Source: Magallana gigas (Eukaryota). From it: DNA of 64,000 nt. This document shows positions 1,396 to 45,524 of this stretch, one piece after another. A program made the position numbers and the translations under genes. The first letter of the stretch is position 1, and each line of letters starts with the position of its first letter. The stretch covers positions 23,374,001 through 23,438,000 of the forward strand of contig NC_088854.1 of the NCBI RefSeq assembly GCF_963853765.1. The letters are read 5' to 3'. The notes beneath the pieces are model-generated. The model did no database searches, was not told the origin of the DNA, and was given only the letters and a program-made list of their open reading frames with translations.

Positions 1396-1971
1396 CAAAG
1401 AAGTACATGTACAATTGAAATCGATACAAGGGGACAAAATCCAAAACTTCTTCATAAACACTTCATCTATTTTTACCCTTAACAAATCTACATGAACGAA
1501 ATCAAATTTCTTACGGAGATTTATGATAATCGGGATCGACACCTCGCATATTTTTTCAACGTTATCATCCGGGGACTTTTTGTGTCGATTGCATGCAAAA
1601 TCCCCGTAGACTTTGATTAAAACCTAAGACCTTTCAAACCAGAAATCTGGACCTTTTTCATTCTGTGGTCTGTCCTAGGTAATTACTTCCCCCAACTTTT
1701 TGACTTTTAACGTAAATACACATACTTGTCAAAGAAGTAAAATTGAAATCGATATATAAGGTTGAGAATTCAAGATTTCTTCATTGAAAGTTTATCTATT
1801 TTTACCCGGTGAAATTAACATAAACAAAAACAAATTTCTTACGGAGATTTATAATGGGAAATGTTAACATCTTTTTTTCCGTTCGGAATTACTGGGAACG
1901 CATCGCACAATTTCTTAACGTTATCATCCGGGTGTTTTTATGTCTGCTGCAATTCAAAATCCCCGTAGACT
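1396..1971. repeat. Diverged direct repeat, two copies (1396-1612 and 1730-1971)
   Basis: Shared blocks in the same order: CAAAGAAGTA, AATTGAAATCGATA, ATCTATTTTTACCC, CAAATTTCTTACGGAGATTT, AACGTTATCATCCGGG, CAAAATCCCCGTAGACT. Confidence 0.75.
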
Positions 1972-2367
1972 CTCTATTTTTGGTTGTGTATTGAAGCCTG
2001 AAGTGGGAGAGGGGCGTTTCAAAAATATACGTAGTTTGAGCACTAAGATCTGAATATTAAGCAAAAAGTTGTGAAAGCAGAAACATAGGACATAGTATAA
2101 GAAATGAACATCAAGTTTACCAGGATATGAACTTGGTTGGTCACGTAATCAAATCCTGTGAAACTCGGAGGCAAAACGCAAAAAGACCGGTAAGTAATAA
2201 ACCATAGGGGCTCGGTTGCCAGACTGTAGAGTTCTTTATCATTTGTTCCCAAGGACAAAAATGATGAAAATGAGTAATCTTAAGTATATTTTTGTGTATT
2301 GGATTAAAAATGTTCACTGAAAACTCATGTTTTAATCATGTAAGAAAAGTGTAATCAATGTAAATTA

Positions 2368-3655
2368 AAACAAGAGGCCCATGTGCCACATCGCTCACCC
2401 GAGCAACAATAGCCTTAACGCTGGTCAACTCGGCATTGCAGTAACTGTCTCAAAATCAAAATATCCTGACAACTACACTGTAAGTACAGCAGATCTTGCT
2501 TAAAAAAAAATATCAAAAATCTGTTGATTTTTATCCACATATTTTTTGGTAAATACCAAGCCCCTTTTGTTGTTTTAGTATTAGTAAGAAGAATTTCTCT
2601 ATTCTTATATAACATCCCCCCGCCCCCATCCCCCACAATCCCCACCCCCCCCCCCCTATTTTTCTCTAGGGAATCGTGATTTGATCAAACTTTATTCTGC
2701 ACAACCTGTGCTTTTACAAACGTTACTGCATTTTGGACTGAATACTTTTCCAGATTATTTTTAAAGATTTTTCTCTATACCTTCCTATTTAAAGATTTAA
2801 TCCCACCACCCCCATTGTGGCCCCATCATACTCCGGGGATCATGATTTGAACAAACTTGAATCTACACTATTTGAGGATGCTTCAACACAAGTTAAGTTT
2901 TTCCGGGCAAATGGTTTTTGAGAGGAAGATTTTTAAAGATTTTCTCTATATATCCCTAATATGTAAAAATTAGCCCCCACCCCCCGCCCGCCATGGTGGC
3001 CCGACCCTACCCCGAGGGATCATGATTTAAACTTACTTGAATTTACACTTTCAAGGATGCTTCCGCTCAAAATAGAGCTTTTCTGGCTTAATAGTTTTTA
3101 GAAGAAGATTTTTAAACATTTTCTCTATATATTCCTATGTAAAAATTAATCCCCCTCAATGTTGCCCCATCATTCAACAAAGACCATAATTTAAACAAAT
3201 TTGAATCTACACTATCTGAGGATGCTTCCAAACAAGTTAAAGCATTTCTAGTCAAATAGTTTTTTAGAAGAAAATTTTTAAAGATTGTCTCTATATTTTC
3301 CCATATAAAACTTGATCCTCCAATGTGGCCTCACCCTACCCCAGGACCATTATTTGAACATACCTACAACACTACCTTAGGATGCATCCACACAAGTTTA
3401 AGCTTTTCTGGCATAATAGTTTTAAGAAGATTTCTAAAGATTCTCTCTATATATTCCTATGTAAAAATCCATATCACATTGTGGCCCCACCCTACCCCTG
3501 GGGACCATGATTTGAACAAACTTGAATTTACACTACCCGAGGATGCTTCCATACAACTTTCAGCTTTTTGGGGCATAAAAACTTTTTAGAAGAAGATTTT
3601 TTAAAAGTACAAACAAAATCTTAATAATTCTAAATTATCTCCCCTTTTAATAGGG

Positions 3656-3686
<31 letters not shown>

Positions 3687-3698
3687 TCTTCACCCAGT

Positions 3699-3758
<60 letters not shown>

Positions 3759-3853
3759 GTGAAAAGTTTACAACAACGACAACGACGATCGACAGACATA
3801 CAAATTTTGATCAGAAAATCTCACTCGAGCTTTCAGCTCAGGTGAGCGAAAAA
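2368..3853 (+). mobile_element. Non-autonomous Helentron-type element (HINE) carrying ~5.5 Cg170/HindIII-like satellite monomers
   Basis: Starts AAACAAGAGGCCC. Subterminal inverted repeats TCGCTCACCCGAGC (2391-2404) and GCTCAGGTGAGCGA (3836-3849), 1 mismatch. Monomer marker GATTTGAACAAACTTGAAT recurs at ~2678, 2844, 3024, 3188, 3351, 3509 (spacing 158-180). This architecture is known from Pacific oyster. Confidence 0.9.
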
Positions 3854-4595
3854 GTAAGTTATAATCAAACTGCAGGGAGTGACCAACCAAGTTCATATCC
3901 AAGTAATAGCGAGCGCACCTCGCACAGCGCCGGCGAGCGAAGCGAGCTCTAAGAACCAGTGTGCGCGGGAAAAAGAACGAGCTAAACCTACAGTTCATCA
4001 AACAAAATTTTTTGTCAACGTCCCATAATGCTCTCTAATGTTTTCACCCGTGGTGCTATGCCAAAATTGGCCGACTTTTAACTCGTAATTTACAGTGACT
4101 TACAGTTTGAAGACACGTTTTGAGTACCGCATATGCTCTGACGAGACTCAACAAGATTTGTTACATGCTTCCATACCTCCGTATTGAGTCGAGAAACGTA
4201 AACAAAGACGAACAAAGTCATGGATGACGTCACAGTGCACTCGCGCTATATTTCCCGCGATAAATTTAGAGGTGGATCAAACATCTGTAATGCGTGTACT
4301 AGCTATTTCAGTATAGACTGCGATACCTGCCTCATTGACATATGATTTGTTTTTATTTTTTTTTTAATATACCGATTTTATGTATATATATTAGCAAGAG
4401 CCATAATTTACTGTCATATCGATCCATTTCAAGCTAATTGTGCATGCATAAGTAGGGAGGAAATAAACAATAAGACATTTTGAACTAAATGAAAAGGAAT
4501 AAAATGAAAAATAAACAGTTAAAAAAATTATGTAGATATTGCATATAGTCAGACCATTAAATTTAAAAGTGGGAAATTACACACATACAAACAGG

Positions 4596-16056: not shown

Positions 16057-19000
16057 CTAGGCCGTCTTGGACGTCCGATGAGATTCACCTTTTAGAGACA
16101 AGTACTGGTCGTGAAAGTCTAGTCTTGCTGTATAGTGAAAAGCGATGTTGGTGAACACCACAAGGTATTCACAAGCAGCGAAACCAGTGTACACTGAAAA
16201 GAGAGAGAAAGAGCTTCAATAGACCACTGAGTCCACTATACCTATACATGCGCGGATCTAGAGGGGGTCATGTGGTCCCCCCCCCCCCGGGAAAATGTTA
16301 TTCAGTTCCTGGTAAAGTAACCTAAAATAGGTCTTGGACTCCCTCCTCTGGAAAATAAAATTAAATCACATGTCTGACACCCCAACCACCACCCCTTCTG
16401 GGGAAAAAATCCGGATCCGCGCATTCTACATGTTTATAATATAAAAAACGAACTCTATAGACGATCAATGTACTCACCGCCACTTTCACAATACCAGTTA
16501 TGTCGAAAATACATGTATACCGCCATCATGAAAATGATGAAATTTGACACAAACATTCCAAGTTTATAGTGGTAGGATTGTATTTCCTGAAAAGAAACAG
16601 AACGAAAACTGCATTGGTGTTCAGTGTCGCGAATTCAGTGCGGTTGTTCAAATATGAAGGTACGTAGAGGACATTGAAAAAAAAAAACTTGCAGCGGTGG
16701 ACCATATACCCTTGAAGGTTTTGTTTCAGCATTGATAGCTACCTTAATAGTCTGCATGGTCTACCGAAGAAAACATTCATTCACTTTTTATAATATACAT
16801 CACACTAATTAAATCACTCTTAAATTATTTTCATAAATTTAAGCGAGTACGTAAAGAACGTAAATTGTCATTACTGTCCATCAGTGTGTTAGTTAGCTTG
16901 ACCAGTTAATTTTTCATTGCATTATAATAAACTTCTGATGGCAACCCGTGCAGACTTTCACTAAAACGTTCGGTCAATCACAAATTAATACACGCATGTG
17001 TTACCTGACAATGTAAATGTTTGTTTGATGTGTAGGTAGGAGAATGAGGAGGCAAAAGGATTATTTATCGCAGGCATTTCGATAGCGTGCAATAAATACT
17101 ATGCAAAATGGAATTTGAAATCATTTTCAAAAAGTTCGCTGGGTGCGTGATATTGATACACGGACTCATTGATTAGAACTGGTAACAGATGTTATTCAAT
17201 TTTGTCCGCTGTTAAATGAATTAACCGTTATAGATTTCTCGAAAAATAAACATAATAAACATAGATATAGAATAATCATGTACATGTACAAACAGCATGT
17301 ACAAGAATGTATCGTTGATTTCTAATTTTTTTTTGGAGGGGTGGGTGGGAGTGGGATTTTTTATTTGCAAGACAGCGATACTAGTAATCGAGCCACACTA
17401 AACTACACTGTACATGCATGTATTCAGAGAGAAGTTATTTCTGTGCATTAGTTAGCTTAGTAGTTAGCAGATCGGAAATTTTTTGACACGTAAAGATGTG
17501 TCATTTGTTTCTTTGGCTTCATCTGAGATAGAACCTCTAAAGGTTATATACACAGCAGACAAGGGAAACAGTCGGAATATTGATCAAATTATAATGATTT
17601 GTTCGTTTTAAATGCAGTACTCTAGCTCTAGTGACTTTATTTCCAGTTTCCTAGGTTTCCCATTAATTTTTGATTAAAACTGTTCACTGACTCAGGGATT
17701 ATACATTTTATTTCGATACTTCTGATTACATTTCATGAATTTAATTATAAATAAAACACGTTTATAATCAAGAGATGCTTTTGAATACACTTATTGTTCA
17801 GTAAACTAGATTGTAATTTAGTTCAGTTTGAGCATAATGTGTCATTTATTTCAAGTCAGAAGGCATCGGGTTATGCATATTAGTATGTAGCGCATCTCTT
17901 TGTAGACAAATGAGAGCATCATTTAGACGTGCAATCTCTTGATAATCAAAAAATTAGAGACTATATGGCAAATACTGTCTTTGCCAGTCTTTAATATCCT
18001 TAAAATCCTAATCCGTCCTGAGGGACAGTTATTGCCTTGCATCTTACAATTTGATCTATATCTTTAGTTTCGATACCGTTTTAATCATTGTCTTAAAAAA
18101 GGCAGTTCGTTTGAAATTCATTTTACTATATGTAATTTTGAGAAAACTGTTTCTCAAAAAGTACCCCCGTTTGGTGTTCACTGTGTTGATTACATTGTTT
18201 ACTTACATTTGGAGTCATCTTTCGGCCCCCTATTGTGTGTCCCCATCGGTACAACAAACAGGTTAACAGCATGTAGACCTCAGATGTCACCATGAATAAA
18301 ACGAACATGCTCTCGTGAATTTCTATAAATTAAAATACTTTTTAAAAAGAGCGTGCGCCTATCTGGTAAGTCAATAGTCATGCATGTTAGCTAAAAACGA
18401 AATTGAAACTTTTATGAATCAAAATATTTCATTTGTATCAAAATAAAGCTAAATGTGTAGAATATTGCAGATTGAAATTTGTTTGTAGTTTATTATTGAC
18501 TTGAGTAAGAATAGTCATCAACAAATCGAATACCTCGGTCATCTAAAGACGAAATGTACGTGAGCACAACTAACGCAAAATTCTCCACCACGTGTAGAAG
18601 AGTGCACAGTCCGGCCAGTGTCGAATACAACTTCCTCCATTTCTCCACTAAAAATCGCATGTGGAAACGAAAGTAAGCTAACGCAATAAGGAACCTAGGA
18701 AACGCATGGAGAGCAATGCAGATTCTCCAGACATTTCTCTGTGGAATGTATCCTCCAATGGCGGCACTTATAGAGGGGAGGTAATTAGGTACCTGCACAA
18801 TTTTTGAAAAGTGTTGATTTACATGTACATGTGCATGTCTTTCGGCTAAACTAATGCTTAACCGCACGCAATTACTGTATTTATACTAAGTACACACTAT
18901 CTTGTCAGTTTATTCTACACAAGTAATAACAAATTTAATATCTTTTGACAAGGGCGCTCAGACTTATTGTAATGGCCATCGTATCCGCTCTGCTCTCTAA

Positions 19001-20041
19001 TGCCCCAGTCACACATTCACGGATCAACTCCACGGTTCTACTACGGAATATTTTCCACAGTTGACACCGGAAAATCAAATATTCGTTAATGCCCCAGTCA
19101 CACATTCACGGATCAACTCCTAAGTTCTACTACGGAATATTTTCCACGGTTGACACAGGAAAATCTAATGATTCGGAGTTAGTACGGATGCACTACGGAA
19201 ATGGATACAAATTGATACATACGATTTACTACGGATTTATACGGAGTTAAAACGGACTTCTACGTTCTAAAACGGTTTAGTAAGTTTTTCTAAGGAAGTA
19301 CTACGGTGGTTTCATCCGTAGTGGAATTTTGAACATATTCAAAAATTGTCGCAGCTATACAAGTATTGCTACGTTTGGATACGATAACAGACGGAAAAGC
19401 CACGGGTCAATACATATCGCCACGAATGATTCCGGATCGCTTCCGTAGCTAATCCGGCATTTGATCCATGAATGTGTGACTGGGGCATAAGACATACATA
19501 TGTATATATAAATACATGTAATACCGGTCCTTATTACTAAAATTGTTACATAATTTATTAGGTCAAGTACGTTGATCCTCTAATCTTGGCCAAGAGTTAC
19601 AATAGGCAGTGACTTTTAACTAAGTTACATACCACTGACTAACCTATATATATATATATATCCTGAAAATATATATTTTAATTATTTTTCTTGCATTTTT
19701 TTCACTTTTATTTTATGAAAGTGATGATCTTTTCAATTTAATATACAAGTTCCATATCTCATTCTCTAATATTTTTTTTCAACATTCTTATTTTATGGGG
19801 TTTTTTTAAAAGGGAGAAAAGAATTCTGATCCTGGTTTTAAGCATTTACAATCATTTAACATATATGAACATGAAATAAAATTTTTAAATATCTTACCCG
19901 ACAATGTGTTGCGGTTGATTCTTCAAAATTAAAATACACAGACCATGCCACACAGAATAAAGTTGCAAAAAACGGCAACCCAGCTACAACGTTGCTTAAA
20001 GATGAAAAATGTACACGAAACAGTGCCTTTTCCTTCTCCAT
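16057..20041 (-). CDS. PGAP2: Post-GPI attachment to proteins factor 2 (Frag1/DRAM/Sfk1 family), paralog a, 254 aa
   Basis: Exons 20041-19898, 18792-18534, 18322-18207, 16586-16478, 16193-16057 with GT-AG introns, 765 nt. Motifs [69 protein letters not shown]. Confidence 0.92.
16247..16424. mobile_element. MITE-like repeat with CATGCGCGGATC TIRs, in PGAP2a intron 4
   Basis: CATGCGCGGATC...GGATCCGCGCAT. Same family as 599-846. Confidence 0.75.
19001..19487. mobile_element. PIF/Harbinger-like MITE (TAA target duplication) with a duplicated left end
   Basis: TIR TGCCCCAGTCACACATTCACGGATCAA / TTGATCCATGAATGTGTGACTGGGGCA, flanked by TAA on both sides. The first 89 bp are repeated at 19090. Confidence 0.8.
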
Positions 20042-20418
20042 GTTCTGTTGATCAATGGTGTACTAAGCTCTTGGATTGTTGTTCAATTGTTGAACATTAA
20101 TTTTTAAAAACTTTCGCATTTAATCCAAAGAACAATGTTTTAGTCCTTGTGTAAACACACAATGACATGTACCTCCTCGATATAGACGTCTGTCAATATT
20201 AAACACAATATTGAACTGTGTGAATTGAATCACGTGACAAGAAATTAGATATACATATACGTATCTTAGATAAACAGAGACTGAACAGTTAGTAGTTATG
20301 TAGTATCTTTATCTTGTACATATGTACAGTTTATCACTTACCTCAGGCAAAAATATCGAAGGTCTGTTTTTTTTTTTAAATAAAATGCGCAGACTTGCAA
20401 CTATATACGAGCACAGGC

Positions 20419-22655: not shown

Positions 22656-25523
22656 TTACATTTCTTTGGGGTGGTCCCCACTCTCCTCCCCGGCCAGCAA
22701 CACCTGTTGGTCAGAGAAGTCGTATTTAGCCGTGTAGTGGAAGGCAATGTTAGAAAATACTACCAGGTATTCACACAATGCAAAAATGGAGTAAACTGAA
22801 ACAGACAAAAAAAAATATTAGACATCCGTTTGCTACATATATTGATCATCATTATCTTTTAAAGGGACATTAAAACATGTCAAATTTTGTGGAAAATTGT
22901 GTTTTAAAGCTGCTAACACACTAAGGTCGTTTTCAAAAAAATTCATGATGCTTACAGTAATTCTATGATGATATTAAAGTAATAAGTAAAATCAGGTGAG
23001 CTAAAAGATAAATACATGTACTGAAGTCTTTCTCACCTCCTGTTTCACAATACCACTCATGTCGGAAAAATGTGTACACTGCTGTCAAAAACATGGCTAG
23101 ATTGAAGACAAACAGTCTCTTCTTATACTGGTACGACCTGACTTCCTGGCATTAATTATAATATTTCTATCAATTCTTGTTACAAGAAAAGCAATGTAAA
23201 TAAAAGTGTAAATATAAGAAAGCAAATTATGGAAAATGCATAAAAACTGTTCACTCACTGATTTGGTCATGACTCTGCCATTACTTTCATGACTCCATTT
23301 ATACAGTATACATGACAACAACATGTAAACCTCTGAACACACCATGAATACTATAAACATATTTTCGTGAACAGCTGAAAAAGAGATTTGTGTAGTAGGT
23401 AAATTAATAGAGAATGTACATCTCTGTAATATGAAATGAAATAGGATGTTCAATTCAAATCTAAAATTAAATTCACATGAAACTCTCAAAACGTGATTCT
23501 GAATGTCCTTTTAATGGTGACAGTATCTAATAACTCACTACCAGTTTATCAAATAAAGGCAATATGCATATGGTTAAAGATTCCCTGTAGAAATACTGAA
23601 TTTTAGAAATCTTAGATTGTAACAGATCCTATTATGCATTTGGCCATATAATAAAGGCTTTCCTGATAAATTTTGTTTAACAAACAATACATGTAATTTA
23701 AAATCCATTTTAGCTTAGTTTTAGCTTTCTCGAACTTACCATAATTATCAGTTGAGGAAACATAAGTTAGAGTCACTAATGCTGTATTCTCCAAAACATG
23801 CAAGAACACACACAGTCTAGCAAGATTTTTGTATAAAGTGTTTCTTGGACCCACATGAAAACTTGTATAGTAACCAAAATATGCAAAAGCAAACAAGAAT
23901 CTTGGTGCTGCATGAAGAGCTATACATATTCTCCATATATATTTCTGGGGAGCATATCCTCCAATTGCTGAACTAATGGACGGAAGATAATTAGCTATCT
24001 GCAATTAAAAAATAACCATAAGTTAGTAAGTAAAATTACGGTAGTCAAAACATTTCAGATCTAGATATTAGTTGAATCCCCAAATTTTACTCTTAATAGT
24101 TTTATTTTCATTTAATATTACCAACAGTGTTATCTGATTTAATCAGATCTGTCACTTATGGTATTGGGTTCATTCGTCCTATCTACCTGTTCGCCTGAGC
24201 CCGTTCACCCATAGTCTCTGTGCTCTAATTATTGTTCCCCTAGACCTTGTTCGCTCCACCTAAACCTCATTCATAAACCATATCATTTTAAGAGAAAAAT
24301 CTTTATTTCATTTACGGTACTCTGAACATTTTCAATGATAAATTTTATTTTACTTTTAAGCCACACCAATATCATTTCTTGTTCGTTGGACATCCAGTAA
24401 AAAAAAGGTACGAGTGGGCGAGCGATTAAATAATAAAATTATTATTCATTATTGGGCTAATTGCTTGATTTTATTGCCATATATTATAGATAACTCTCAT
24501 GTTTGGTTTTTTTTTTTTTTTACGGTTTGCTTGATGTTTTAAAACAGTTTAAAAAAATTGAGACATTAATTTGCCCACTTTGAAGGGGAGAAGCGGATCA
24601 GCACCTATTACATCTTTGAAGAATTTATATACCCATGCAAGCACAACACAATTAATCATTTAATTTCTAAATGACATATATACGTAGAGGGAACTGTATC
24701 AAACTGTCCAAGGGCAAACGGAAACTAAGGTGAACGGAAACTAAGGTGAACGGCATCAAGGGTGAACACATTTTACTGCAAACGAACATATTACATTTAT
24801 CATTTGCAAGACACAAACCATTAATTAAACAATCACTTACTATGCTAAATCGCTTCATGCATGAGCATCTACATTTTTAATTTAGGAGTGTCATTATTTT
24901 GTAGACATGTACAGGGTTGTCTCTAAAAATTGAAGTAAAAGGAAGAAAGCGTAGTGCGAGTTAGAGGGTTCGCTGCGAATTTGTAAGTCATGAGTTTGAA
25001 TCCTGCTAGGGTTTTTAAAAAATTTCTTTTCCACACTTTTTAAAAACGTATTTCTTGGCTACATAATGTAAAGTTCGAAAATTCGATACTAGTGAAAGTA
25101 TTTTAATTATATGTACTTTAATCCACATTAATATCCACAGAAGTCCCGCACCACCTTAATATTTACTCAGGAAGTTACTGTAACTATTGCACTAAAAGTC
25201 TAAAACAGATTAGGGTTAAAGGGAAGTTATGGCAATGTACGATAAAATATTGTTGAATTCGATGAAGTATTTTTTTTTTTATAATTTACTCATTTTAATT
25301 AGTCTTTGCTTAATCAGAAGTGGCAAGAGGAAATTCGGGTTTCCTGGCTTACTGCATACGATTCTCCTATTATACTTACCCGACAATGCGTCCATGTTGA
25401 TTCCTTAAAATTCAGTAAGATCGATAAAACGATACAAGTTAAAGCTCCTAATAAGGGTAAGAGGGCAACAACTGTCACTAAAAGGGAAAAATTTACATTG
25501 AAAAGTGATTGTTGTCGACGCAT
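22656..25523 (-). CDS. PGAP2: PGAP2 paralog b, 255 aa
   Basis: Exons 25523-25380, 23998-23740, 23374-23259, 23145-23037, 22795-22656 with GT-AG introns, 768 nt. Motifs [61 protein letters not shown]. Confidence 0.92.
24166..24767. mobile_element. Degraded TIR element with short GTTCACCC-type subterminal repeats, in PGAP2b intron 1
   Basis: Left cluster of GTTCGCC/GTTCACCC/GTTCCCC. Right cluster GGGCAAAC, GGTGAAC x3, including a 16-bp tandem ACGGAAACTAAGGTGA. Confidence 0.4.
24950..25159 (+). mobile_element. Partial copy of the TTAA-ended MITE with a tRNA-like segment
   Basis: GTAAGTCATGAGTTTGAATCCTGCTAGGG and right end GTCCCGCACCACCTTAA, homologous to 9916-10234. Confidence 0.55.
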
Positions 25524-25535
25524 GGTTGACGGAAG

Positions 25536-26704
25536 GAATTACAGTGAAGTCGTACCCAAACCCACTCGCACCCAAACAAACTCGTACTCAAATGGTCCGG
25601 TCGTACCCAAAACTGAGTGGTTCACTCGCACCCAAATATTTGAGTACGACTTCACTAGTCAACTCGTACCCACGGTATTTTTTGGCGTTTGCTTTAAACT
25701 TTGTTGTTTTGTATTAGATGCATGTCTGTAGCTCTAATTCGGAAAAAAATTTCCATCCACATTTGTTCAGATCGGGAGCTACCGACATGCAGCTAGTTTT
25801 GTATGTACTTATAAACAGTTATATACTTCAATAATACGCTCACATGTGTATTTGTTGTAGTTCTATGTCAATTTGAATAATTAGCCTAAATAATAATTTC
25901 ATCTCCGGGGGTTTGCAAAGTTTTTTAAAATTAATATATAATATATTAAACTAGTGTCTATTTCAGTTTAAAAAGGATTTTAGACTATTTCTCTTAAACA
26001 TATAATATGACAGCTAGTTTTGTATGTACTTAAACAGTTATATACTTCAGTAATACGCTCACATGTGTATTTGTTGTAGTTCTATGTCATATACATATAA
26101 TGTTTAATAATAAAAACTTCCAAAAGTGATGAAAATGTGTTTTTCTTCTTAATTTCTTCTTAATTATGAGCAGCATGTTTATTTTGTGCTGACAAACTCA
26201 TTGGTTGATCGGTTGAACGGAATCACATAAAGCAATTAATTTTAATTGATGATAGTTAACCTGCTCATAATCATTCTTTGATCCGTCCGCATCAGAACTA
26301 GATTGTACTAGATTTTTATAACAAATTCTTTCAAATTAGTTATACAATTTGCATATTAATGTTATCGATAATATACAAGACATAACAACATACGAATAAA
26401 AGCCATTCATTTTATTTTCTTATAATAAATATAGATCTGCCCGTATTCAAATACACTGAGATCTAGGATAAAACATAACTAAAAAACATAACAAAATATG
26501 AATGAATATGAATGAAAACTATTGTATTTTATTTTCTTATGACTTAGTATAAATATATTTTTTCCCGTGGGTACGAGTTCACTAGTGAAGTCGTACTCAA
26601 ATATTTGGGTGCGAGTGAACCACTCAGTTTTGGGTACGACCGGACCATTTGAGTACGAGTTTGTTTGGGTGCGAGTCGGGTTGGGTACGACTTCACTTGA
26701 TTCC
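25536..26704. mobile_element. Mutator/foldback-like non-autonomous element A (140-bp TIRs, 8-bp target duplication GACGGAAG)
   Basis: TIRs 25536-25675 and 26565-26704, nearly identical, built from repeated (A/G)(C/G)TCG(T/C)AC(C/T)CA motifs. GACGGAAG at 25528-25535 and 26705-26712. Confidence 0.88.
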
Positions 26705-26720
26705 GACGGAAGTAAATAAA

Positions 26721-27426
26721 GAATTACAGTCAAGTCTTACCCAACCCAACTCGCACCCAAACCAACTCGTACCCAAATATTTGAGTACGACTTCACTAGT
26801 CAACTCGTACCCACGGGGAAAAATATACTTATACTAGGAAAATAAAATGAATGGCTTTTATTCGTATGTTGTTATGTTTTGTATATTATCGATAACATTA
26901 ATATGCTAATTGTACAACAAATTTAAAAGAATTTGTTATAAAAATCTGGTATACTATAATTCTATACTTGAATGCGGACGGATTAAAGAATGATTATGAG
27001 CAGGTTAACTATCATCAATTAAAATTAAAATTAATTGCTTTATGTGATTCCGTTCAAAATAAACATGCTGCTCATAATTAAGAAGAAACACACATTTTCA
27101 TCACTTTTGGAAGATCAACATGGTTCGAGAGAGGTGTGTTTCCTGCAAGAAAATGGTAAGTAAATCACTATATTAGATATTGTTTTATAATTAAAACATA
27201 TTTTTTTGAGTAATCAAATGGATTAGGCAACAGGCAAAGTTAATTTAAAGTTAAATAAAACATAAATAAAAAACATAACATATTAATGAGAACTATTGTA
27301 TTTTATTTTCCTAGTATAAATATATTTTTCCCGTGGGTACGAGTTGACTAGTGAAGTCGTACTCAAATATTTGGGTACGAGTTGGTTTGGGTGCGAGTCG
27401 GGTTGGGTACGACTTAACTTGATTCC
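26721..27426. mobile_element. Mutator/foldback-like non-autonomous element B, same family (9-bp target duplication GTAAATAAA)
   Basis: TIRs start GAATTACAGTCAAG and end CTTAACTTGATTCC. GTAAATAAA at 26712-26720 and 27427-27435. Interior ~26837-27114 is an inverted copy of ~26117-26420 in element A. Confidence 0.88.
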
Positions 27427-27706
27427 GTAAATAAAAAAATTTAAGTCTTTAAAACGTTTATAGATTCGTTTAAAATCTCGTTCATTAACTCAAGCACCTT
27501 GTCGACATAGATCTCATAACATAACGGCCTTGACATTTCAACGTGTAAACATTTCTGAAATCATTTCAGAGAAAGACAGAAAAGGCAAAATGATGTCTTT
27601 TCAGTCGATTGTCAGCTGTTTTCGGATCCAGTTTTCATAACGTATTATCCATTTTTCAGAAGTTTATGGCTTTGTTTTATTTCTTAACCTGACCATAGTT
27701 TAAAAA

Positions 27707-30700
27707 ATGTCAAAACTAAGTCAACAAGACAGGAAAGACTTGGAGAAATTTACTAAATTTTTGATTTATAAAAGTCTACAAATAATTGTGCAATCAAGGC
27801 TAGGGGAGAAGATCCAAGCAAAGTCTAAACCATTTTCTTCAGGAGCAGATTGGGTAAATTTATATTGATAATCTTTTTAAATTTTATGTGTTGCATATGT
27901 TCATTGCTGGTTTTTAACACATTTAAGCTTTTGATATTAATGCCTGATAAAATAAACAATCATTCTCTATATTTATTGCATTAAGTATGTGAAGTACAAG
28001 GCATACAAAATTGATGTTTTGTTTGCATCAATATGATTTTTGTATTCTAAACCACATGCATGCATACAATATTAGAATTAACTAAATTGTAATGAATATT
28101 TTGTGGTTTAAAATACAGGTAATATTTGCAATTAATATTGTATGTTTTAGTTTAACCTGGCCATAAAAGATATAGCTGAAGTGCATAATGAAACAAAGAA
28201 GGCTTTAGTCAGTCAGACAGCTCTATTAAGTCAAAATGTTTGTGTGGAAATTTCTCTCAAGACATCAGAAGGGGACTCCATGGTACTGGAAACCTGGTAC
28301 ATAGGATTGAACAAAGAGACTTGTGATGTAAATGCCAGGATCTCATACACAGTATACAATCGAATGGGTATTGCACTAAAGACATTGTTCAGTATTTCCA
28401 GAGTCACTCCAGCGTACAAACTTTCCCGACAGCAAGGAGCTAATGCTGATGAGTATGTGATATGCTACCGGTTTTACCAAGGAGATCCCCAGTTTTTCAT
28501 GCTAGGAGACAATTATCAGACTATAAAGGTTGGTTCTGTGCCAACACCTGTTGGGACCATCTACATCAATCTGGCATACAGAACAAAACTATTAATAACA
28601 CCTCAAAAATCCTGCAAGGCAATTCCCATTGAAGTGAAGGATGATCATTTTAAGAAAGACAACAGTCCAAGACGACCAACTACTCCCAAACCATGCTCAT
28701 TGGGCTTTAGAAGGTATTATGATATTTTGTGTCACAAACAAAAATATATATATTATATGCCTGGAAAAAAGATACCTTTTACTTTGCTTTTCCAACCAAA
28801 ATAGTACCTTGGTAAAATATTGAACTTAATACTTTCCCTTCTTTGTAACTTGGCTGGTTGGAGTAGTTGCCACATTGCTATATGTTTTCATCCAGTTACA
28901 ATGTAATTTAAATCAAATCTTTCACATTCAATTCTGTATCATAATATGTCCATCTGTGAAATCTAACAGCATCTTGTCAAAAATGAGGCACAAACTTCTA
29001 CATATTATTATGAAGATAGTGCCACAATTTCTCATTTTTTACATTTCTGGTGACTCAGACTAGTCTCCATTACACCCCTAAAATATAGAATTGTGTGATA
29101 TCTGTTCTAAATGCAATTCTTTCATGAATAATGAACTCCAACGAGAGCACAAATTCCACCTAGCATCCATATCATAAACATATTCTAAGATACATGTTAC
29201 ATGCACTTTACAATGAATTTGTGTGGTTCACCAAGGCCTTTTTTAATTTTCTTTAAATAGAAACACACGTCAGAATTCCCAGCCAAAGTTACTTTGAGAT
29301 TTTCCTGTACAATCTATTAAAATATCCACACAGGAACATACATGTTTGACAATTTGGCAGCATATACAATCTAATTTTTAGGCAGAGCTCTTAAATGGTA
29401 TAATGAATTAGCATTAATTAAGAAAAATTAAGATTCTAGATAATTTTAGCCGGAAAACTTGTTTTTCCTAACTATAGGTAAAAATTTCATGAACTTCAGA
29501 TGGTTAAGATTAGGGGAATATTCCTAGGGAATTTATAAGCTTCAAGGTTGGATTCATCCCAACAATGTTAACTTTAGTGTTTTTATGCATGTGTTGCTAT
29601 AAAAATGTAACACTTGGTAGCAAGAAATTGATAAACAGACACACTTATTCATTTGATGCAGTCAGAAAGACAATTCTCAAGAATCGGTAATGTTGTACAC
29701 CTACAAGTGTATAAAGTATGGTAAATGTATAATGTATATCTATTGTTTATGCTATCATCATGATTATAAAAGTAATTGATAGGCAGGATGTATATACAAG
29801 ATCTGTTATCAGCCTTCAGTCAGACATAAGATAATACTTAAAACCTCAGAGCACTTGTCTTTGCATCAAACCAGGAAACAGTGTCACAAAAAGGAAGTAG
29901 GATGCAGTGATAATGCAAACAAAATGTCAAACACAAAGTGTATGAATGCACATGTATTATTAGTTTTCAAAATTCCAAAAAGAAGAAAAATAAATTTCCT
30001 TAATTAATTATATTAATGAAACTAATTAATATTTCTTCATAATTGTAGTTTTAGTTTTAAGATAACGATTTATAATTTTACACTATACATGTACTTAGTG
30101 TTTTTTGTGTTGATGACAAATATATATTAATTAAATATCATAAGACATGTATGATATATATCGATCATGCAAGTGGACTATTTCAAGCATATGATGACAT
30201 AACTTCATGTGAGTTTTTGTAATTGAATTATCATTATGATTGATTGAATATAATGAGAATATCCAGTGTCGGGGAAAAAACCAACAAGTTTACAATGTTA
30301 CAGTAACTACTTTTTTACCATTTTTTTAATTACGAAACATATATTTTTATTAGACATTAAAACAGCTTTGTTTTGGTTTATACCAGAAACAGTACATCGG
30401 AGGATTTGTTTGGGGATGGTGTTGATGGACAAGACCTGTGTTCCACCACCTTCGACAACAGTCCAGGGGAAGCCTTCCTCCTCGGCATGACACAGCACGG
30501 ACTGGTGCCACCCAACATACAGCAGAAGACAGCCCTCAAAACAGACAACAGGGAGAATAATGAGGCTCCCAAAAAACAGGAAAAGTAGGGAATTTGAAAG
30601 TCTTTTTTCTTTTTTCTTTTTTAACTTGTATTGAATTGACATCCATAAAATTGTCTCTTGTTTGATTTTTTTGAAGGTGTATGATAATTTAAAGTTTAAT

Positions 30701-41704: not shown

Positions 41705-44700
41705 TCATTGGACGCTTTCCCCTGCCCCTTTCTTCCTAATTCGTAAACTTCTTCGTTTCCCATCCATTTCATCATCTAGACCATTAGTAATGGCCTTGAC
41801 CTCAGGCGTATCTCCATTGGTGTACACAGAATCTGAGATGACGTCAGCTGCTATGATTGATTTGTTTTTGAATTCTAAATAACCGCTGACATGATATCCC
41901 ATGTTGGAGTATGCTATTACATACTCAAATGCAGAGAAAAAGCTAAATGCTGAAAAAATAAGAAAAAATGGCTACAAATGATCATAAACATACAAATATC
42001 AACATTAAACAGAAATAAAATTGTGCATTAGTAAATTATTATAACAATAATTTAATTAATCACATTTTGTTTTTCTCTCCTTGCAGATTTTACAGTGATT
42101 TGAGATAGAAATAGATTGAGATTGGCCAAGATTAATCTTAGGATCTCTCTATGCATTACAAGTTTATCACAGATTGAAGAACTTACCATAAGGAACACAG
42201 AATACCCTGTGTAATATAAAAGCTGTTAACAGTCCGGTTGTGGCTGTCATTATACAGGCAAACATGATCCATTTAATCTTCAGGGATAACTTCTCCTGTA
42301 AATTGAAAATCAAATGAAGTCATTAATTTCTATTTACCAATAGTTAGCTCTCCCTTCTGCTCCCTTTTCCTTACAACTAATTATTGTGCAATGGTTTTTT
42401 TAACAACAGGGTCTATGCTTAATAGCCTTTATCTCTACCAGGTACATGTATATTTGTGAATTTAAACATTAGAGATACCACAGAGTACTGGTATATTACA
42501 TGTAACCTGTTGCCTTTTTAAAAAATATCAACCAAGCGCAGCAAAACCACTTCTTTTGCTACTCTTTTTGTCCATATTGCATTAGTATTCCTCATTTTGC
42601 ACATTTTATGTAGAAAACGAGAAAATTAATAGTGGTATTCAGGCATGAAAGAGGAACAAATTGAACAAGACAATATTGAGATGATGACCATCTCAAAGGG
42701 CCCCGCTTACATAGTTGATAAAAGGATGAGAAGAATTACAGAGAATATTGCTTTGACCTTGACCTATAACTTTGAAATTTTCCATCTGGCATAGAACTTC
42801 TAATTCAATCTTATTACCCCTTACATACTGGCATTTTTGTTCAATCTGAACAGATAAAAACAAAAATGGAAAATAATCTATGGTCTAAAACTGATTATAA
42901 AGAGATCTGCTATGACGTTCATATTGACTTGATTCAAAGTCACTGCACGCCATTAACGAAACGGCTCTGTTTAAGTAAAGTATTAGCCAAAAGGGTTAAG
43001 TGGAGAGTATATATATGCTCTTAAAAAAGGATTTTTGTTTGATCTGATATGACCTTGACATTTAATCTACAAACATCATTCAGGGTCACTGCATAATCAT
43101 AGGCACCATGTTGGTGAAGAATGAGCCAACCTGGAGCAAAGGGAGAAAAGATAATTTATGCTTCGGACAAGGATTTTACCTATAATTCTGCTATCATAAT
43201 AATGGCATTTGACGTTGAAAATTGGTTAAAGGTCACTGCACACCTGTTATTTTACAAGCTGTGCAATGTAAATTAAGCTAAATAAGGCTTAGTGGAAAGC
43301 ATATATACTCTGAAAAAAGGATTTTTGCATGGTCCGATATGACCTTGATCCTTGACCTACAAACTTTCTTCAAGATCACTGCACATCTTTTGACCATAGA
43401 CACTCTATGAGTGAAGTATGAGCTAGACTGGAAAAAGTGGAGAGAAGACAAGAATTTCCTTTATAATTCTGCTATGACCTTAATCTTAGACCTAGAATTA
43501 TGGTTCAAGGTCACTGCACACCCTTTACCCAAAGGCACTCTGTGAGTGAAGTATGTGCCAGATTGGGCCAAGGGGAGAGAAGATATGCTCCGAACAAGCA
43601 ATCTTGGACGGGCAGACAGACGGAAGGACAAAAAGACAGACGGACGGACAGAAGGACTGTTCACTATTGGGCGCCTGCAGAGTGGGGCTCTAATAATTCA
43701 CTTATAAATAGGCATTAAGGAGAAAAGATATTTGAGATTTTACAACTGGAGTGAGGATATTGTGAGATTTATTCATTAGATTAGACTATGAGATATTACA
43801 GATGGGTAATAATATCTTACCGTAGGGGTCAAGATATCTGTCCTCGTCCATTTGAAGATGAGGGTGTTGAGTAACATGTAGCAGCAACTTGTAACCATAA
43901 AAACTACAAATATCTTCTCATGGACAGCTGTAAATGAGAAACAATAATTCTCATTGCAGTTTACATTTAAAAGCACGTTTTTTTTTGTAACAATTATGTC
44001 TCCAAATTCTTAAATGCATTATTAATAAAATGTAGGCTCTAAACTTCCCATAAAGTAAAATACTAGGAACTATCATCATACTTCTCTAGCATTAACTTCC
44101 TGCCACAAACTTGAGCAAATGTACTCTAATTGTAAATGTTCCTGGTATGTTTGTACATACAAGTATAAAGTACCAGTAGTATTTCCTGTATTTCATTTAT
44201 CAATGCATTTAAAGTTGTTTGTACATGTATTGGTTACAATGGTGATTATGATATAATTTACCATGTTTAATTCATAATATTCTTTAGCTGCAGGTCTGTA
44301 GCTCCCATCCTGAAATAATTTGGATGGACAACCTGAGAGCTACAGTGCCTCCATAGTAAAAACTGCAATATACGGCGCACAAAAATTGCACTGTTTTAGA
44401 TTGATAATGGTAACCTTATTTACATACAAATTCTTTAGAAAACATTAGTACCATTAAAATTTTGATGCAATATTATTTACTAGGGCCTACTGATATTTTC
44501 TCTGTACTTGCTTCTGATATTCTTTTAAACACCATCACTAGCCCCCAAAAGGTCAAGTGGTGCAGTCTGTTTACATGTAAAAATGGTGACTCCTGATCTC
44601 GAAATGAATTTAACATGCTTTATTCTCAAAGGTCGGTTAACATGTTTTAGAGGTAAGTAAGAATGTGATATCAGTGGTAAATTGCATGAAGAATTTAATG

Positions 44701-45524
44701 GTACTAATATTTCCCACAGAATTTGTGTGTAAATAAGGATAATCAGTCCAACAACTAGTGCAATTTTTAACATGCCAAAAACTGCTGTTTTTAACTATGT
44801 TTGGCACTGCAGCTCCCAGTTCGTCCATCTGAATTTTTTCAAACTGTGAGCTACAGACCTATTCTTTAAATAAGGTAATTATAGATGTCAAGTAGCGAGT
44901 ACTTACGATAGTTTTCCTTGTTAGAGATATAGGTAACTCCAACCAAACAAGAATTTTCAATGGTGTATAACCAAAAGTTAAGACTGAGTAATTTCTTGAA
45001 AAAAGGTCTGAAATCCTTGTCTACATATGCTAATCTTGCAGCATAATAACTGTAGTACATGAAGCCAACTGCAAATCTTGGTGTGGCATGAAGACCAATG
45101 CAAATTCTCCAAAAGTACGCCCCTGGAGTTATACCTGTCACAGCACTAATGGAGGGAATAACATTGGTTGCCTGAAAAATTAAAGTTTTTCAGCATTTTA
45201 ACACGTATTTACATATATCAGTATATAACATTAATATAAAACGTGTAAAAACCACGCCCAAAAATATACGGCTGGTTTAGATAAGGCATGGTTCAAAGAG
45301 TGTATCGAAAGTACTGTGAATTATCAAATACACATAAGTAATGATCACGGTAATCCAATTACCTTACACACCGTCTCGTTGACGTCATCGAACCGAAATA
45401 TAATACCATGTAGAAAACAGTACAGCAATGAAAACGCTGGCAAAGAGACAGTTACGATTGCAAATGGCTTAAACGGGACAGTAAGCTGAACATCTTCTAC
45501 TCTTCGGGTTTCTAACTTCCCCAT
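41705..45524 (-). CDS. Divergent PGAP2-like (Frag1/DRAM/Sfk1 family) paralog c, 295 aa
   Basis: Exons 45524-45363, 45171-44907, 43927-43821, 42295-42187, 41949-41705 with GT-AG introns, 888 nt, same intron phases (0,1,0,1) as paralogs a and b. Motifs NVIPSISAVTG, WRICIGLHATPRF, ENYPVHEKIFVVF, FSAFEYVIAYSNMGYH. Confidence 0.9.
42664..43694 (+). mobile_element. Third HINE-like family with ~5 internal 135-147-bp units, in PGAP2c intron 3
   Basis: Starts AACAAGACAATATTGAG with GGGCCCCGC. GTCACTGCA-type marker recurs five times. (GGAC/AGAC)n tract at ~43607-43655. Ends GTGGGGCTCTAAT. Confidence 0.8.
44287..44860. mobile_element. Near-intact copy of the TA-flanked GCTGCAG-TIR MITE, in PGAP2c intron 2
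   Basis: Left TA-GCTGCAGGTCTGTAGCTCCC, right GAGCTACAGACCT. Imperfect inverted similarity extends ~190 bp inward. Confidence 0.75.

What the first reader, a model, noticed from the sequence alone, without database searches (positions are those of the whole stretch)
25521..27435. Two Mutator-like elements inserted ~8 bp apart, 12 bp upstream of the PGAP2b ATG, in the PGAP2b/ATG13 divergent promoter
Seen: the pre-insertion site reconstructs as CATGGTT-GACGGAAG-TAAATAAA-AAAATTT. Element A duplicated GACGGAAG and element B duplicated GTAAATAAA, and the two targets overlap by one base. The target contains an ETS-type CGGAAGT motif. About 1.9 kb is added between two head-to-head genes that were otherwise only a few hundred bp apart, yet both ORFs are intact. 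Near-identical TIRs suggest recent events. Inference: local hopping or promoter targeting, with likely effects on PGAP2b and autophagy-gene expression. The long inverted segments could also promote rearrangement.
Basis: partly seen in the sequence, partly recalled or inferred. Interest (0 to 1): 0.72.

Follow-up and report, generated by a model that had tools for sequence, protein, structure and literature searches.

The report
Two jumping-gene relics in oyster promoter
Two small non-coding cut-and-paste transposons of one young oyster family landed 8 bases apart in the short shared promoter of a PGAP2-like gene and ATG13; the insertions are real, but this is an ordinary kind of event and the elements look hAT-like rather than Mutator-like.

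Summary
Element A (window 25536-26704, 1169 bp) is flanked by GACGGAAG. Element B (26721-27426, 706 bp) is flanked by GTAAATAAA. The two duplications share one G, and A starts 12 nt upstream of the PGAP2-like ATG. Removing both elements leaves 291 bp between the two ATGs.

Both are non-coding members of one family of about 50 copies in this 564-Mb oyster genome. They share asymmetric termini, 100-140-bp inverted ends and five copies per end of a subterminal motif.

The label "Mutator-like" is not supported. Of 43 paired ends, 39 have a recognisable duplication: 37 of 8 bp and 2 of 9 bp. The 31 perfect 8-bp sites show the hAT-type nTnnnnAn bias (T2 19/31, A7 17/31). No autonomous partner was found, so the superfamily remains inferred.

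A-type copies are 99.1-99.9% alike, so they are very young. B-type copies are 96-99.7% alike. A and B belong to different subfamilies, so B is not a local hop of A.

CGGAAG occurs at only 1 of 41 other target sites, so it is not a target motif.

Independent DNA contigs reach 28-29 nt across both outer junctions. RNA shows ATG13 transcripts starting about 145 bp beyond B, and a spliced but weak PGAP2b signal. Polymorphism and the PGAP2b transcription start remain untested. Interest is modest.

The parts
25380..25523 (-). Coding exon 1 of the PGAP2-like gene ('PGAP2b'). The ATG is at 25523-25521 and the GT donor at 25379-25378.
   Evidence: Translated. It is 50% identical to exon 1 of the upstream paralogue. 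An RNA contig of run X15 joins it to exon 2, skipping 1381 nt, which equals intron 23999-25379.
25528..25535 (.). Left copy of the 8-bp target duplication of element A (GACGGAAG).
25536..26704 (+). Element A: a 1169-bp non-coding transposon of the 'A-type' subfamily. Its inverted ends are about 140 bp long and 98% alike.
   Evidence: Five other full copies exist in the genome, all with target duplications (four of 8 bp, one of 9 bp), and are 99.1-99.3% identical to A in substitutions. Its longest ORFs, up to 84 aa, lie across the repeated ends.
25536..25675 (+). 5' inverted end of A. It carries five forward copies of the motif CG[TC]AC[CT]CAA.
   Evidence: The motif is absent from the other 62 kb of the window.
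26565..26704 (-). 3' inverted end of A.
26705..26720 (.). 16-bp host spacer between A and B. It consists of the right copy of A's duplication (26705-26712) and the left copy of B's duplication (26712-26720), and keeps an intact CGGAAGT.
26721..27426 (+). Element B: a 706-bp non-coding transposon of the 'B-type' subfamily. Its termini point the same way as A's, but its interior is inverted relative to A's.
   Evidence: Eighteen other full copies were aligned: B is 99.2% identical to its nearest copy and 97.9% to the consensus.
27427..27435 (.). Right copy of the 9-bp target duplication of B (GTAAATAAA).
27436..27570 (+). Unique 135-bp stretch between B and the apparent ATG13 transcript start. 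It is the remaining ATG13 core promoter.
   Evidence: RNA contig 15 of run X15 (depth 220) begins at 27571 and is directly preceded by sequencing-adapter letters. A TCAG initiator-like motif lies at 27566-27569. That this marks the transcription start is an inference.
27707..27852 (+). ATG13 coding exon 1, followed by GT..AG intron 27853-28149.
   Evidence: ORF. The splice is seen in RNA runs X15 and X21. The Pfam ATG13 hit lies at 28241-28588.

Best explanation
Two separate cut-and-paste insertions of non-autonomous DNA transposons from one young oyster family hit the same short shared promoter. That promoter was about 155 bp from the PGAP2b ATG to the ATG13 transcript start.

Both elements lack a transposase gene. 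They must be moved in trans by an enzyme that recognises their shared asymmetric tips (GAATTACAGT... and ...ACTTGATTCC) and the repeated subterminal motif. The staggered cut is 8 bp, occasionally 9 bp, and favours nTnnnnAn. This points to a hAT-type transposase rather than a Mutator-type one.

B belongs to the older subfamily and probably arrived first. A belongs to a subfamily whose copies differ by under 1% and arrived recently, 8 bp away.

The closeness is most likely due to a preference for open promoter DNA, to tethering of the transposase on the resident copy, or to both.

Consequences:
- The ATG13 core promoter (135 bp) is left intact.
- PGAP2b now has transposon DNA 12 nt upstream of its ATG, so its 5' UTR or transcription start must lie in element A or beyond it.

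Shown: the two elements, their duplications, family membership, duplication length and bias, copy identities, ATG13 expression and PGAP2b splicing.

Inferred: the superfamily, the order of insertion, the reason for the closeness, and the effect on PGAP2b.
For: - Element ends and duplications.
- Family size: 51 5'-type ends genome-wide at up to one mismatch. There are 98 3'-type ends, a count inflated by end fragments carried inside another repeat.
- Duplications at 43 paired ends: 31 perfect 8 bp, 6 of 8 bp with one mismatch, 2 of 9 bp, 4 with none; two of those four are the end fragment inside the other repeat.
- Target bias over the 31 perfect 8-bp sites: T at position 2 in 19/31 (p=0.001) and A at position 7 in 17/31 (p=0.011). 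This matches the hAT pattern reported for hobo and Hermes (PMC3276498, PMC10368747).
- Subterminal motif: five copies per end and none elsewhere in the window. Repeated subterminal binding sites are a hAT trait (PMC10368747).
- Non-coding: no ORF above 84 aa. The two larger family copies examined are small elements carrying nested inserts.
- Ages.
- Independent DNA contigs at both outer junctions, the ATG13 transcript start and splice, and the PGAP2b splice.
- A second case of family-into-family insertion, at C3:51799874-51800606.
- Two of about 50 copies lying within or beside another copy is far above what I estimate for random placement in 564 Mb (about 2e-4 expected for adjacency; my own arithmetic).
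Against: - No autonomous copy was found. No hAT, MULE, P-type or IS1595/Merlin-type domain hit lies within a plausible distance of an unpaired family end.
- The tips do not fit the usual hAT YARNG start, and the 100-140-bp inverted ends are much longer than typical hAT ends.
- The target bias rests on only 31 sites, and positions 5-6 are also A-rich.
- The junction-bridging contigs reach only 28-29 nt into the elements and stop in repeat sequence.
- Nothing here shows where PGAP2b transcripts begin.
Confidence: 0.8

Rival explanations
1. The elements are non-autonomous Mutator-like elements (MULEs), moved by a MURA-type transposase.
For: The inverted ends are long (about 100-140 bp) and carry repeated internal motifs. 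One of the two window copies has a 9-bp duplication. MULE transposase genes are present in this genome (81 hits). Mutator elements are known, from general knowledge, to favour the 5' ends of genes.
Against: 37 of 39 recognisable duplications are 8 bp and only 2 are 9 bp, whereas 9-11 bp is the Mutator norm. The T2/A7 bias is the hAT signature. No MULE domain lies near any unpaired family end. The nearest is 8.8 kb from a variant end on C2, and the other copies of that MULE have no family end nearby.
Confidence: 0.12
2. The elements belong to another superfamily that makes 8-bp duplications, such as P or Merlin, rather than hAT.
For: An 8-bp duplication with an occasional 9-bp one fits Merlin (8-9 bp) and P (8 bp). 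The 3' tip begins with GG. P-type (25 hits) and IS1595/Merlin-type (27 hits) transposase domains exist in the genome. The tips do not fit the hAT YARNG rule.
Against: The target is AT-rich with T2/A7, not the GC-rich palindrome known for P (GTCCGGAC; PMC3276498). No P-type or Merlin-type hit is plausibly linked to a family end. The closest are 9.6 kb away (next to a captured end fragment, not a true end) and 19 kb away.
Confidence: 0.2
3. The A-spacer-B structure arose in one event, either an inverted duplication, an aberrant (alternative) transposition, or arrival as one 1.9-kb composite, and not by two insertions.
For: A's right part and B's left part form a large quasi-palindrome around the 16-bp spacer. 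Paired hAT ends are known to act together (PMC3744419, PMC9910405).
Against: Each element has its own exact duplication (8 bp and 9 bp), and the empty site reconstructs cleanly. A and B are different subfamilies with different ages. The outer flanks (GACGGAAG and GTAAATAAA) do not match each other as a composite would require. The 16-mer spacer has only one other genome match, with no family ends near it.
Confidence: 0.04
4. The arrangement is an assembly artefact, with repeat copies wrongly placed at this locus.
For: The elements are repeats. Short-read contigs break inside them, and no contig spans the whole stretch.
Against: Contigs of independent run X2 join unique flank to element sequence at both outer junctions without mismatch at the left one. 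The perfect duplications and clean empty-site reconstruction are not expected from a mis-join. In run X1 the window's own letter at the one A-specific position checked (25660) has a depth of about 10, close to single-copy depth.
Confidence: 0.03

Closest known systems
Non-autonomous hAT elements and hAT-type MITEs (for example Ds of maize, or the Mar MITEs of Drosophila, PMC3517528)
   Same: They make an 8-bp target duplication with an nTnnnnAn bias. They have no coding capacity and carry repeated subterminal motifs near both ends. Their two tips differ slightly; Hermes' ends also differ by two swapped base pairs (PMC10368747). Closely linked pairs arise often (PMC3429523).
   Different: Here the tips are GAATTAC/GGAATCA rather than YARNG, and the inverted ends are 100-140 bp rather than 10-25 bp. 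No hAT partner was found in this genome, and 2 of 39 duplications are 9 bp.
Mutator-like elements (MULEs)
   Same: Long inverted ends of over 100 bp, non-autonomous derivatives, and a known taste for promoters and 5' UTRs.
   Different: The duplication here is 8 bp, not 9-11 bp. The target bias is hAT-like, and no MULE transposase is linked to the family.
Closely linked Ac/Ds pairs that undergo alternative transposition (PMC3744419, PMC9910405, PMC3239180)
   Same: Two elements of one family lie side by side with termini pointing the same way. The 3' end of one faces the 5' end of the other across 16 bp ('reversed ends'), and the outer ends could define a 1.9-kb macrotransposon.
   Different: No rearrangement or composite movement has been observed here, and activity of the transposase is only inferred from young copies.

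Membership tests
hAT superfamily (non-autonomous member) | 8-bp target site duplication | tested here: met
   31 perfect 8-bp duplications, 6 of 8 bp with one mismatch and 2 of 9 bp, among 39 recognisable duplications.
hAT superfamily (non-autonomous member) | Target consensus nTnnnnAn | tested here: met
   T2 19/31 (p=0.001) and A7 17/31 (p=0.011), with 10/31 having both. The sample is small. The reference pattern is in PMC3276498 and PMC10368747.
hAT superfamily (non-autonomous member) | Short inverted ends (about 10-25 bp) starting with YARNG | tested here: not met
   The tips are GAATTACAGT and GGAATCAAGT, and the inverted ends are 95-140 bp. The YARNG rule is from general knowledge.
hAT superfamily (non-autonomous member) | Repeated subterminal transposase-binding motifs | tested here: met
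   CG[TC]AC[CT]CAA occurs five times in each end of A, is fewer in B, and is absent from the other 62 kb. That these are binding sites is inferred.
hAT superfamily (non-autonomous member) | An autonomous partner with the same tips encoding a hAT transposase (DDE plus hAT dimerisation domain) | tested here: inconclusive
   None of 123 PF05699 hits lies near an unpaired family end. No more DNA could be fetched to compare ends.
Mutator / MULE | 9-11-bp target site duplication | tested here: not met
   Only 2 of 39 duplications are 9 bp and none is longer.
Mutator / MULE | Long inverted ends (about 100-200 bp or more) | tested here: met
   133 nt at 98% in A and 95 nt at 96% in B.
Mutator / MULE | A partner encoding a MURA-type (MULE domain) transposase | tested here: inconclusive
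   None of 81 PF10551 hits is credibly linked to a family end.
MITE (miniature inverted-repeat element) | Small, non-coding, with inverted ends and a target duplication, and multiple homogeneous copies | tested here: met
   B is 706 bp and its 19 aligned copies (B included) are 96-99.7% alike. A is 1169 bp, large for a MITE, and its six copies (A included) are 99.1-99.9% alike. The family has only about 50 copies.
P superfamily | 8-bp duplication at a GC-rich palindromic target (GTCCGGAC-like) | tested here: not met
   The length fits, but the targets are AT-rich with T2/A5-7. The P motif is from PMC3276498.
Merlin superfamily | 8-9-bp duplication and an IS1595-type transposase partner | tested here: inconclusive
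   The duplication lengths fit. None of 27 PF12762 hits is within 19 kb of a family end.

The most novel reading that the evidence does not exclude
The family homes to active promoters or to its own resident copies. A still-active oyster hAT-type transposase would steer insertions into open, H3K4me3-marked promoter DNA or next to bound copies. Candidates include the Spindlin-Tudor-bearing hAT transposases noted elsewhere in this genome by earlier readers. This would explain two hits 8 bp apart here and a family-in-family nesting on C3. It would also leave a reversed-ends pair able to rearrange the PGAP2b/ATG13 locus.
Probability: 0.1. Interest if true: 0.6.

Novelty: new member of a known kind. 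Interest (0 to 1): 0.27.

Why it matters
As it stands this is a clean but ordinary example of small DNA transposons inserted in a gene-proximal region.

It has some practical value:
- The A-type subfamily, with copies under 1% apart, shows that a cut-and-paste transposase was active very recently in this oyster. Such insertions are therefore likely to differ between animals and could serve as markers.
- One member of a three-gene PGAP2-like cluster now has transposon DNA 12 nt from its start codon. This makes it a natural test of whether a transposon end can supply a 5' UTR or promoter.
- The side-by-side pair with facing ends is the configuration that drives chromosome rearrangements in maize and rice.

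It also corrects the family label from Mutator-like to 8-bp, hAT-like.

Tried and rejected
- Search for an autonomous partner:
  - The two longer family copies turned out not to be autonomous. L062 (3.4 kb) is a B-type copy with a nested reverse-transcriptase element (822-aa ORF, RVT_1). L061 (2.8 kb) is a 620-bp element with a 2.2-kb non-coding insert.
  - L020 and L022 are truncated older relatives of A's 5' half.
  - Many 'solitary' 3'-type ends are a 57-bp end fragment carried inside another repeat of at least 2.9 kb. The Helitron ORFs in L063 are unrelated.
  - Positions of hAT, MULE, IS1595/Merlin and P-type domain hits were compared with all family ends, and none is linked.
I did not try to get those letters another way.
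- Empty-site alleles: two exact-pattern scans of metagenome contigs found nothing. No empty-site joints appeared in runs X1, X2, X15 or X21, but short-read contigs break in the repeats, so this says nothing about polymorphism.
I redid the count from the stored loci.
- RNA depth over the elements comes mostly from other copies (616 of 751 reads were only 90-95% alike), so it was not used for this locus. RNA contig 13 of run X15, which starts exactly at the element edge, carries 133 foreign letters and belongs to another copy.
- The paper search for an oyster MITE family of this kind gave nothing specific. Earlier notes of this scan held no look-alike by sequence.
Full report
**What is there.** The window is G000:C2:23374001-23438000 of a 564-Mb, ten-chromosome oyster assembly. 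Read from the sequence, the order along the plus strand is:
- CAT at 25521-25523, which is the ATG of a minus-strand gene
- GGTT
- GACGGAAG at 25528-25535
- element A at 25536-26704 (1169 bp)
- GACGGAAG at 26705-26712
- GTAAATAAA at 26712-26720, overlapping the previous repeat by one base
- element B at 26721-27426 (706 bp)
- GTAAATAAA at 27427-27435.

The elements add 1892 bp. The ATG-to-ATG distance falls from 2183 bp to 291 bp without them.

**The genes.**
- The minus-strand gene matches Pfam Frag1, the PGAP2-type family, at window 23741-23992. Two more such genes lie at about 18.5 kb and 45 kb in the window.
- Its five coding exons align without stops to the upstream paralogue at 50-71% identity.
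- Exon 1 is 25380-25523, and intron 1 (23999-25379) has GT..AG ends. An RNA contig of run X15 skips exactly 1381 nt there.
- The plus-strand gene is ATG13. Its ATG is at 27707, the Pfam ATG13 match lies at 28241-28588, and intron 27853-28149 is spliced in two RNA runs.
- An abundant RNA contig (depth 220) begins at 27571 and is directly preceded by sequencing-adapter letters. A TCAG initiator-like motif lies just upstream. I take this as the approximate ATG13 transcript start, which is an inference.
- B therefore ends about 145 bp upstream of that start. Before the insertions, the PGAP2b ATG lay only about 155 nt from it.

**The family.**
- A and B share their tips (5' GAATTACAGT..., 3' ...ACTTGATTCC) and long inverted ends (A 133 nt at 98%, B 95 nt at 96%).
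- Both carry the subterminal motif CG[TC]AC[CT]CAA. It occurs five times per end in A and nowhere else in the other 62 kb of the window.
- Neither has an ORF above 84 aa.
- Genome-wide there are 51 5'-type ends within one mismatch. There are 98 3'-type ends, but many of these are a 57-bp end fragment carried inside an unrelated repeat of at least 2.9 kb.
- In every paired copy a 5'-type tip is matched with a 3'-type tip.

**Superfamily.**
- Of 43 paired ends found in the fetched loci, 31 have perfect 8-bp duplications, 6 have 8 bp with one mismatch, 2 have 9 bp (B here, and L005), and 4 have none. Two of those four are the captured end fragment, not true copies.
- Over the 31 perfect 8-bp sites, oriented by the element, T is at position 2 in 19 (p=0.001) and A is at position 7 in 17 (p=0.011).
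- This is the nTnnnnAn pattern reported for hobo and Hermes (PMC3276498, PMC10368747).
- Hermes also has repeated subterminal binding motifs and tips that differ by swapped bases (PMC10368747).
- Mutator elements typically give 9-11 bp (general knowledge), so that defining feature was tested and not met.
- Against hAT: the tips do not start with YARNG and the inverted ends are unusually long.
- I found no autonomous partner. The two larger copies are small elements with nested inserts. No hAT, MULE, IS1595/Merlin or P-type domain hit is credibly close to an unpaired end.
- I therefore file the family as 'hAT-like by target signature, superfamily not proven'.

**Age and relationship.**
- The six A-type copies differ by 1-11 substitutions in about 1170 bp, which is 99.1-99.9% identity. 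The window's A differs from the other five copies mostly by indels. That is a very recent burst.
- B-type copies are 96.0-99.7% alike. The window's B is 99.2% identical to its nearest relative and 97.9% to the consensus.
- A and B differ by a 45-bp segment in both ends. Their shared interior is only 78% alike and runs in opposite directions, although the tips point the same way.
- They are therefore two independent arrivals from different subfamilies. B is not a local hop of A.
- The duplications fit either order of insertion. The subfamily ages suggest B arrived first.

**Why so close.**
- With about 50 copies in 564 Mb, I estimate about 2e-4 chance pairs within 20 bp (my own arithmetic).
- A second case exists at C3:51799874-51800606, where one family member with its own 8-bp duplication sits inside another.
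- This points to non-random targeting. The cause could be open DNA at a compact two-way promoter, or tethering to a resident copy. Closely linked Ds pairs arise at about 1% frequency in rice (PMC3429523).
- The CGGAAGT motif itself is not a target. Only 1 of 41 other sites has CGGAAG within the 32-bp site.

**Consequences.**
- ATG13 keeps 135 bp of unique upstream DNA and is well expressed.
- PGAP2b is spliced but weakly represented. Its k-mer depth is about 10-30 against 220 for ATG13 in X15, and it has almost no reads in X21. Depth is a poor measure of expression.
- Transposon DNA starts 12 nt upstream of the PGAP2b ATG, and I saw no AG acceptor in the last 37 nt before the ATG, read. So the 5' UTR or transcript start of PGAP2b must now lie in element A or beyond. 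This is an inference. No read here shows the start.
- A's 3' end faces B's 5' end across 16 bp. The junction folds as a quasi-palindrome with arms of about 110 nt (-96.9 kcal/mol, z = -18).
- This is the 'reversed-ends' layout that causes rearrangements with Ac/Ds (PMC3744419, PMC9910405). Nothing of the kind has been observed here.

**Independent support and limits.**
- Contigs of run X2 join unique flank to element at both outer junctions: 25309-25564 with no mismatch, and 27399-28900. They reach only 28-29 nt into the elements, just under the tool's 31-nt rule.
- No empty-site joints were seen in four runs or in metagenome contigs. Short-read contigs break in these repeats, so polymorphism is untested.
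- Run labels are coded, so I cannot say whether 'organism B' is another species.

**Verdict.** This is a real, tidy, recent double insertion of a small 8-bp-duplication DNA transposon family in a shared promoter. The 'Mutator' label and the motif-targeting idea are not supported. It is of modest interest unless homing, or an effect on PGAP2b, is shown.

Noticed in passing
L063-L066, L068 and L069 (for example G000:C3:11212331, C4:26682583, C9:6673690): A 57-bp piece of this family's inverted end, with conserved sequence on both sides, is carried inside another repeat of at least 2.9 kb present at six of the fetched loci and probably at others among the unpaired ends. It inflates counts of 'solitary' ends. 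L063 also holds Helitron Rep and PIF1 ORFs nearby.
   Followed up: partly
L062:548-3919 (G000:C7:49621047-49624418): A B-type copy with an 8-bp duplication carries a nested insert of about 2.7 kb with an open 822-aa reverse-transcriptase ORF (RVT_1, E=5e-30). It is probably a young non-LTR retrotransposon.
   Followed up: partly
L049:812-2386 (G000:C3:51799185-51800759): One family member (733 bp, duplication AAATATAT) is nested inside another (834 bp) at the inner edge of its right inverted end. The outer element has no recognisable duplication.
   Followed up: partly
window 24839-25192 (PGAP2b intron 1): A very high-copy repeat. Summed contig depth is 1,700-4,250 against about 10 for the flanks in DNA and RNA runs, with many loose ends at 24912 and 24948.
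   Followed up: no
window about 16060-20062, 22659-25523 and 43779-45240 (minus strand): Three Frag1/PGAP2-like genes lie on the same strand. The first two are 50-71% identical per exon. The third is more distant and has a TGA inside its Pfam match, so it may be an intron or a broken gene.
   Followed up: partly
window 27120-27160 (inside element B): An ATG-led 12-codon stretch runs straight into GTAAGT, so it looks like a captured first-exon fragment.
   Followed up: no
G000:C3:36926128-36926143: This is the only other exact genome match of the 16-bp spacer GACGGAAGTAAATAAA. No family ends are nearby, so it is probably chance (about 0.3 or more expected).
   Followed up: partly
window 25536-26704 versus 26721-27426: The A-type interior (A 582-909) is inverted relative to the B-type and 834-bp subfamilies, while the asymmetric tips keep the same orientation. 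This suggests a flip of the interior by recombination between the long inverted ends during the family's history.
   Followed up: partly
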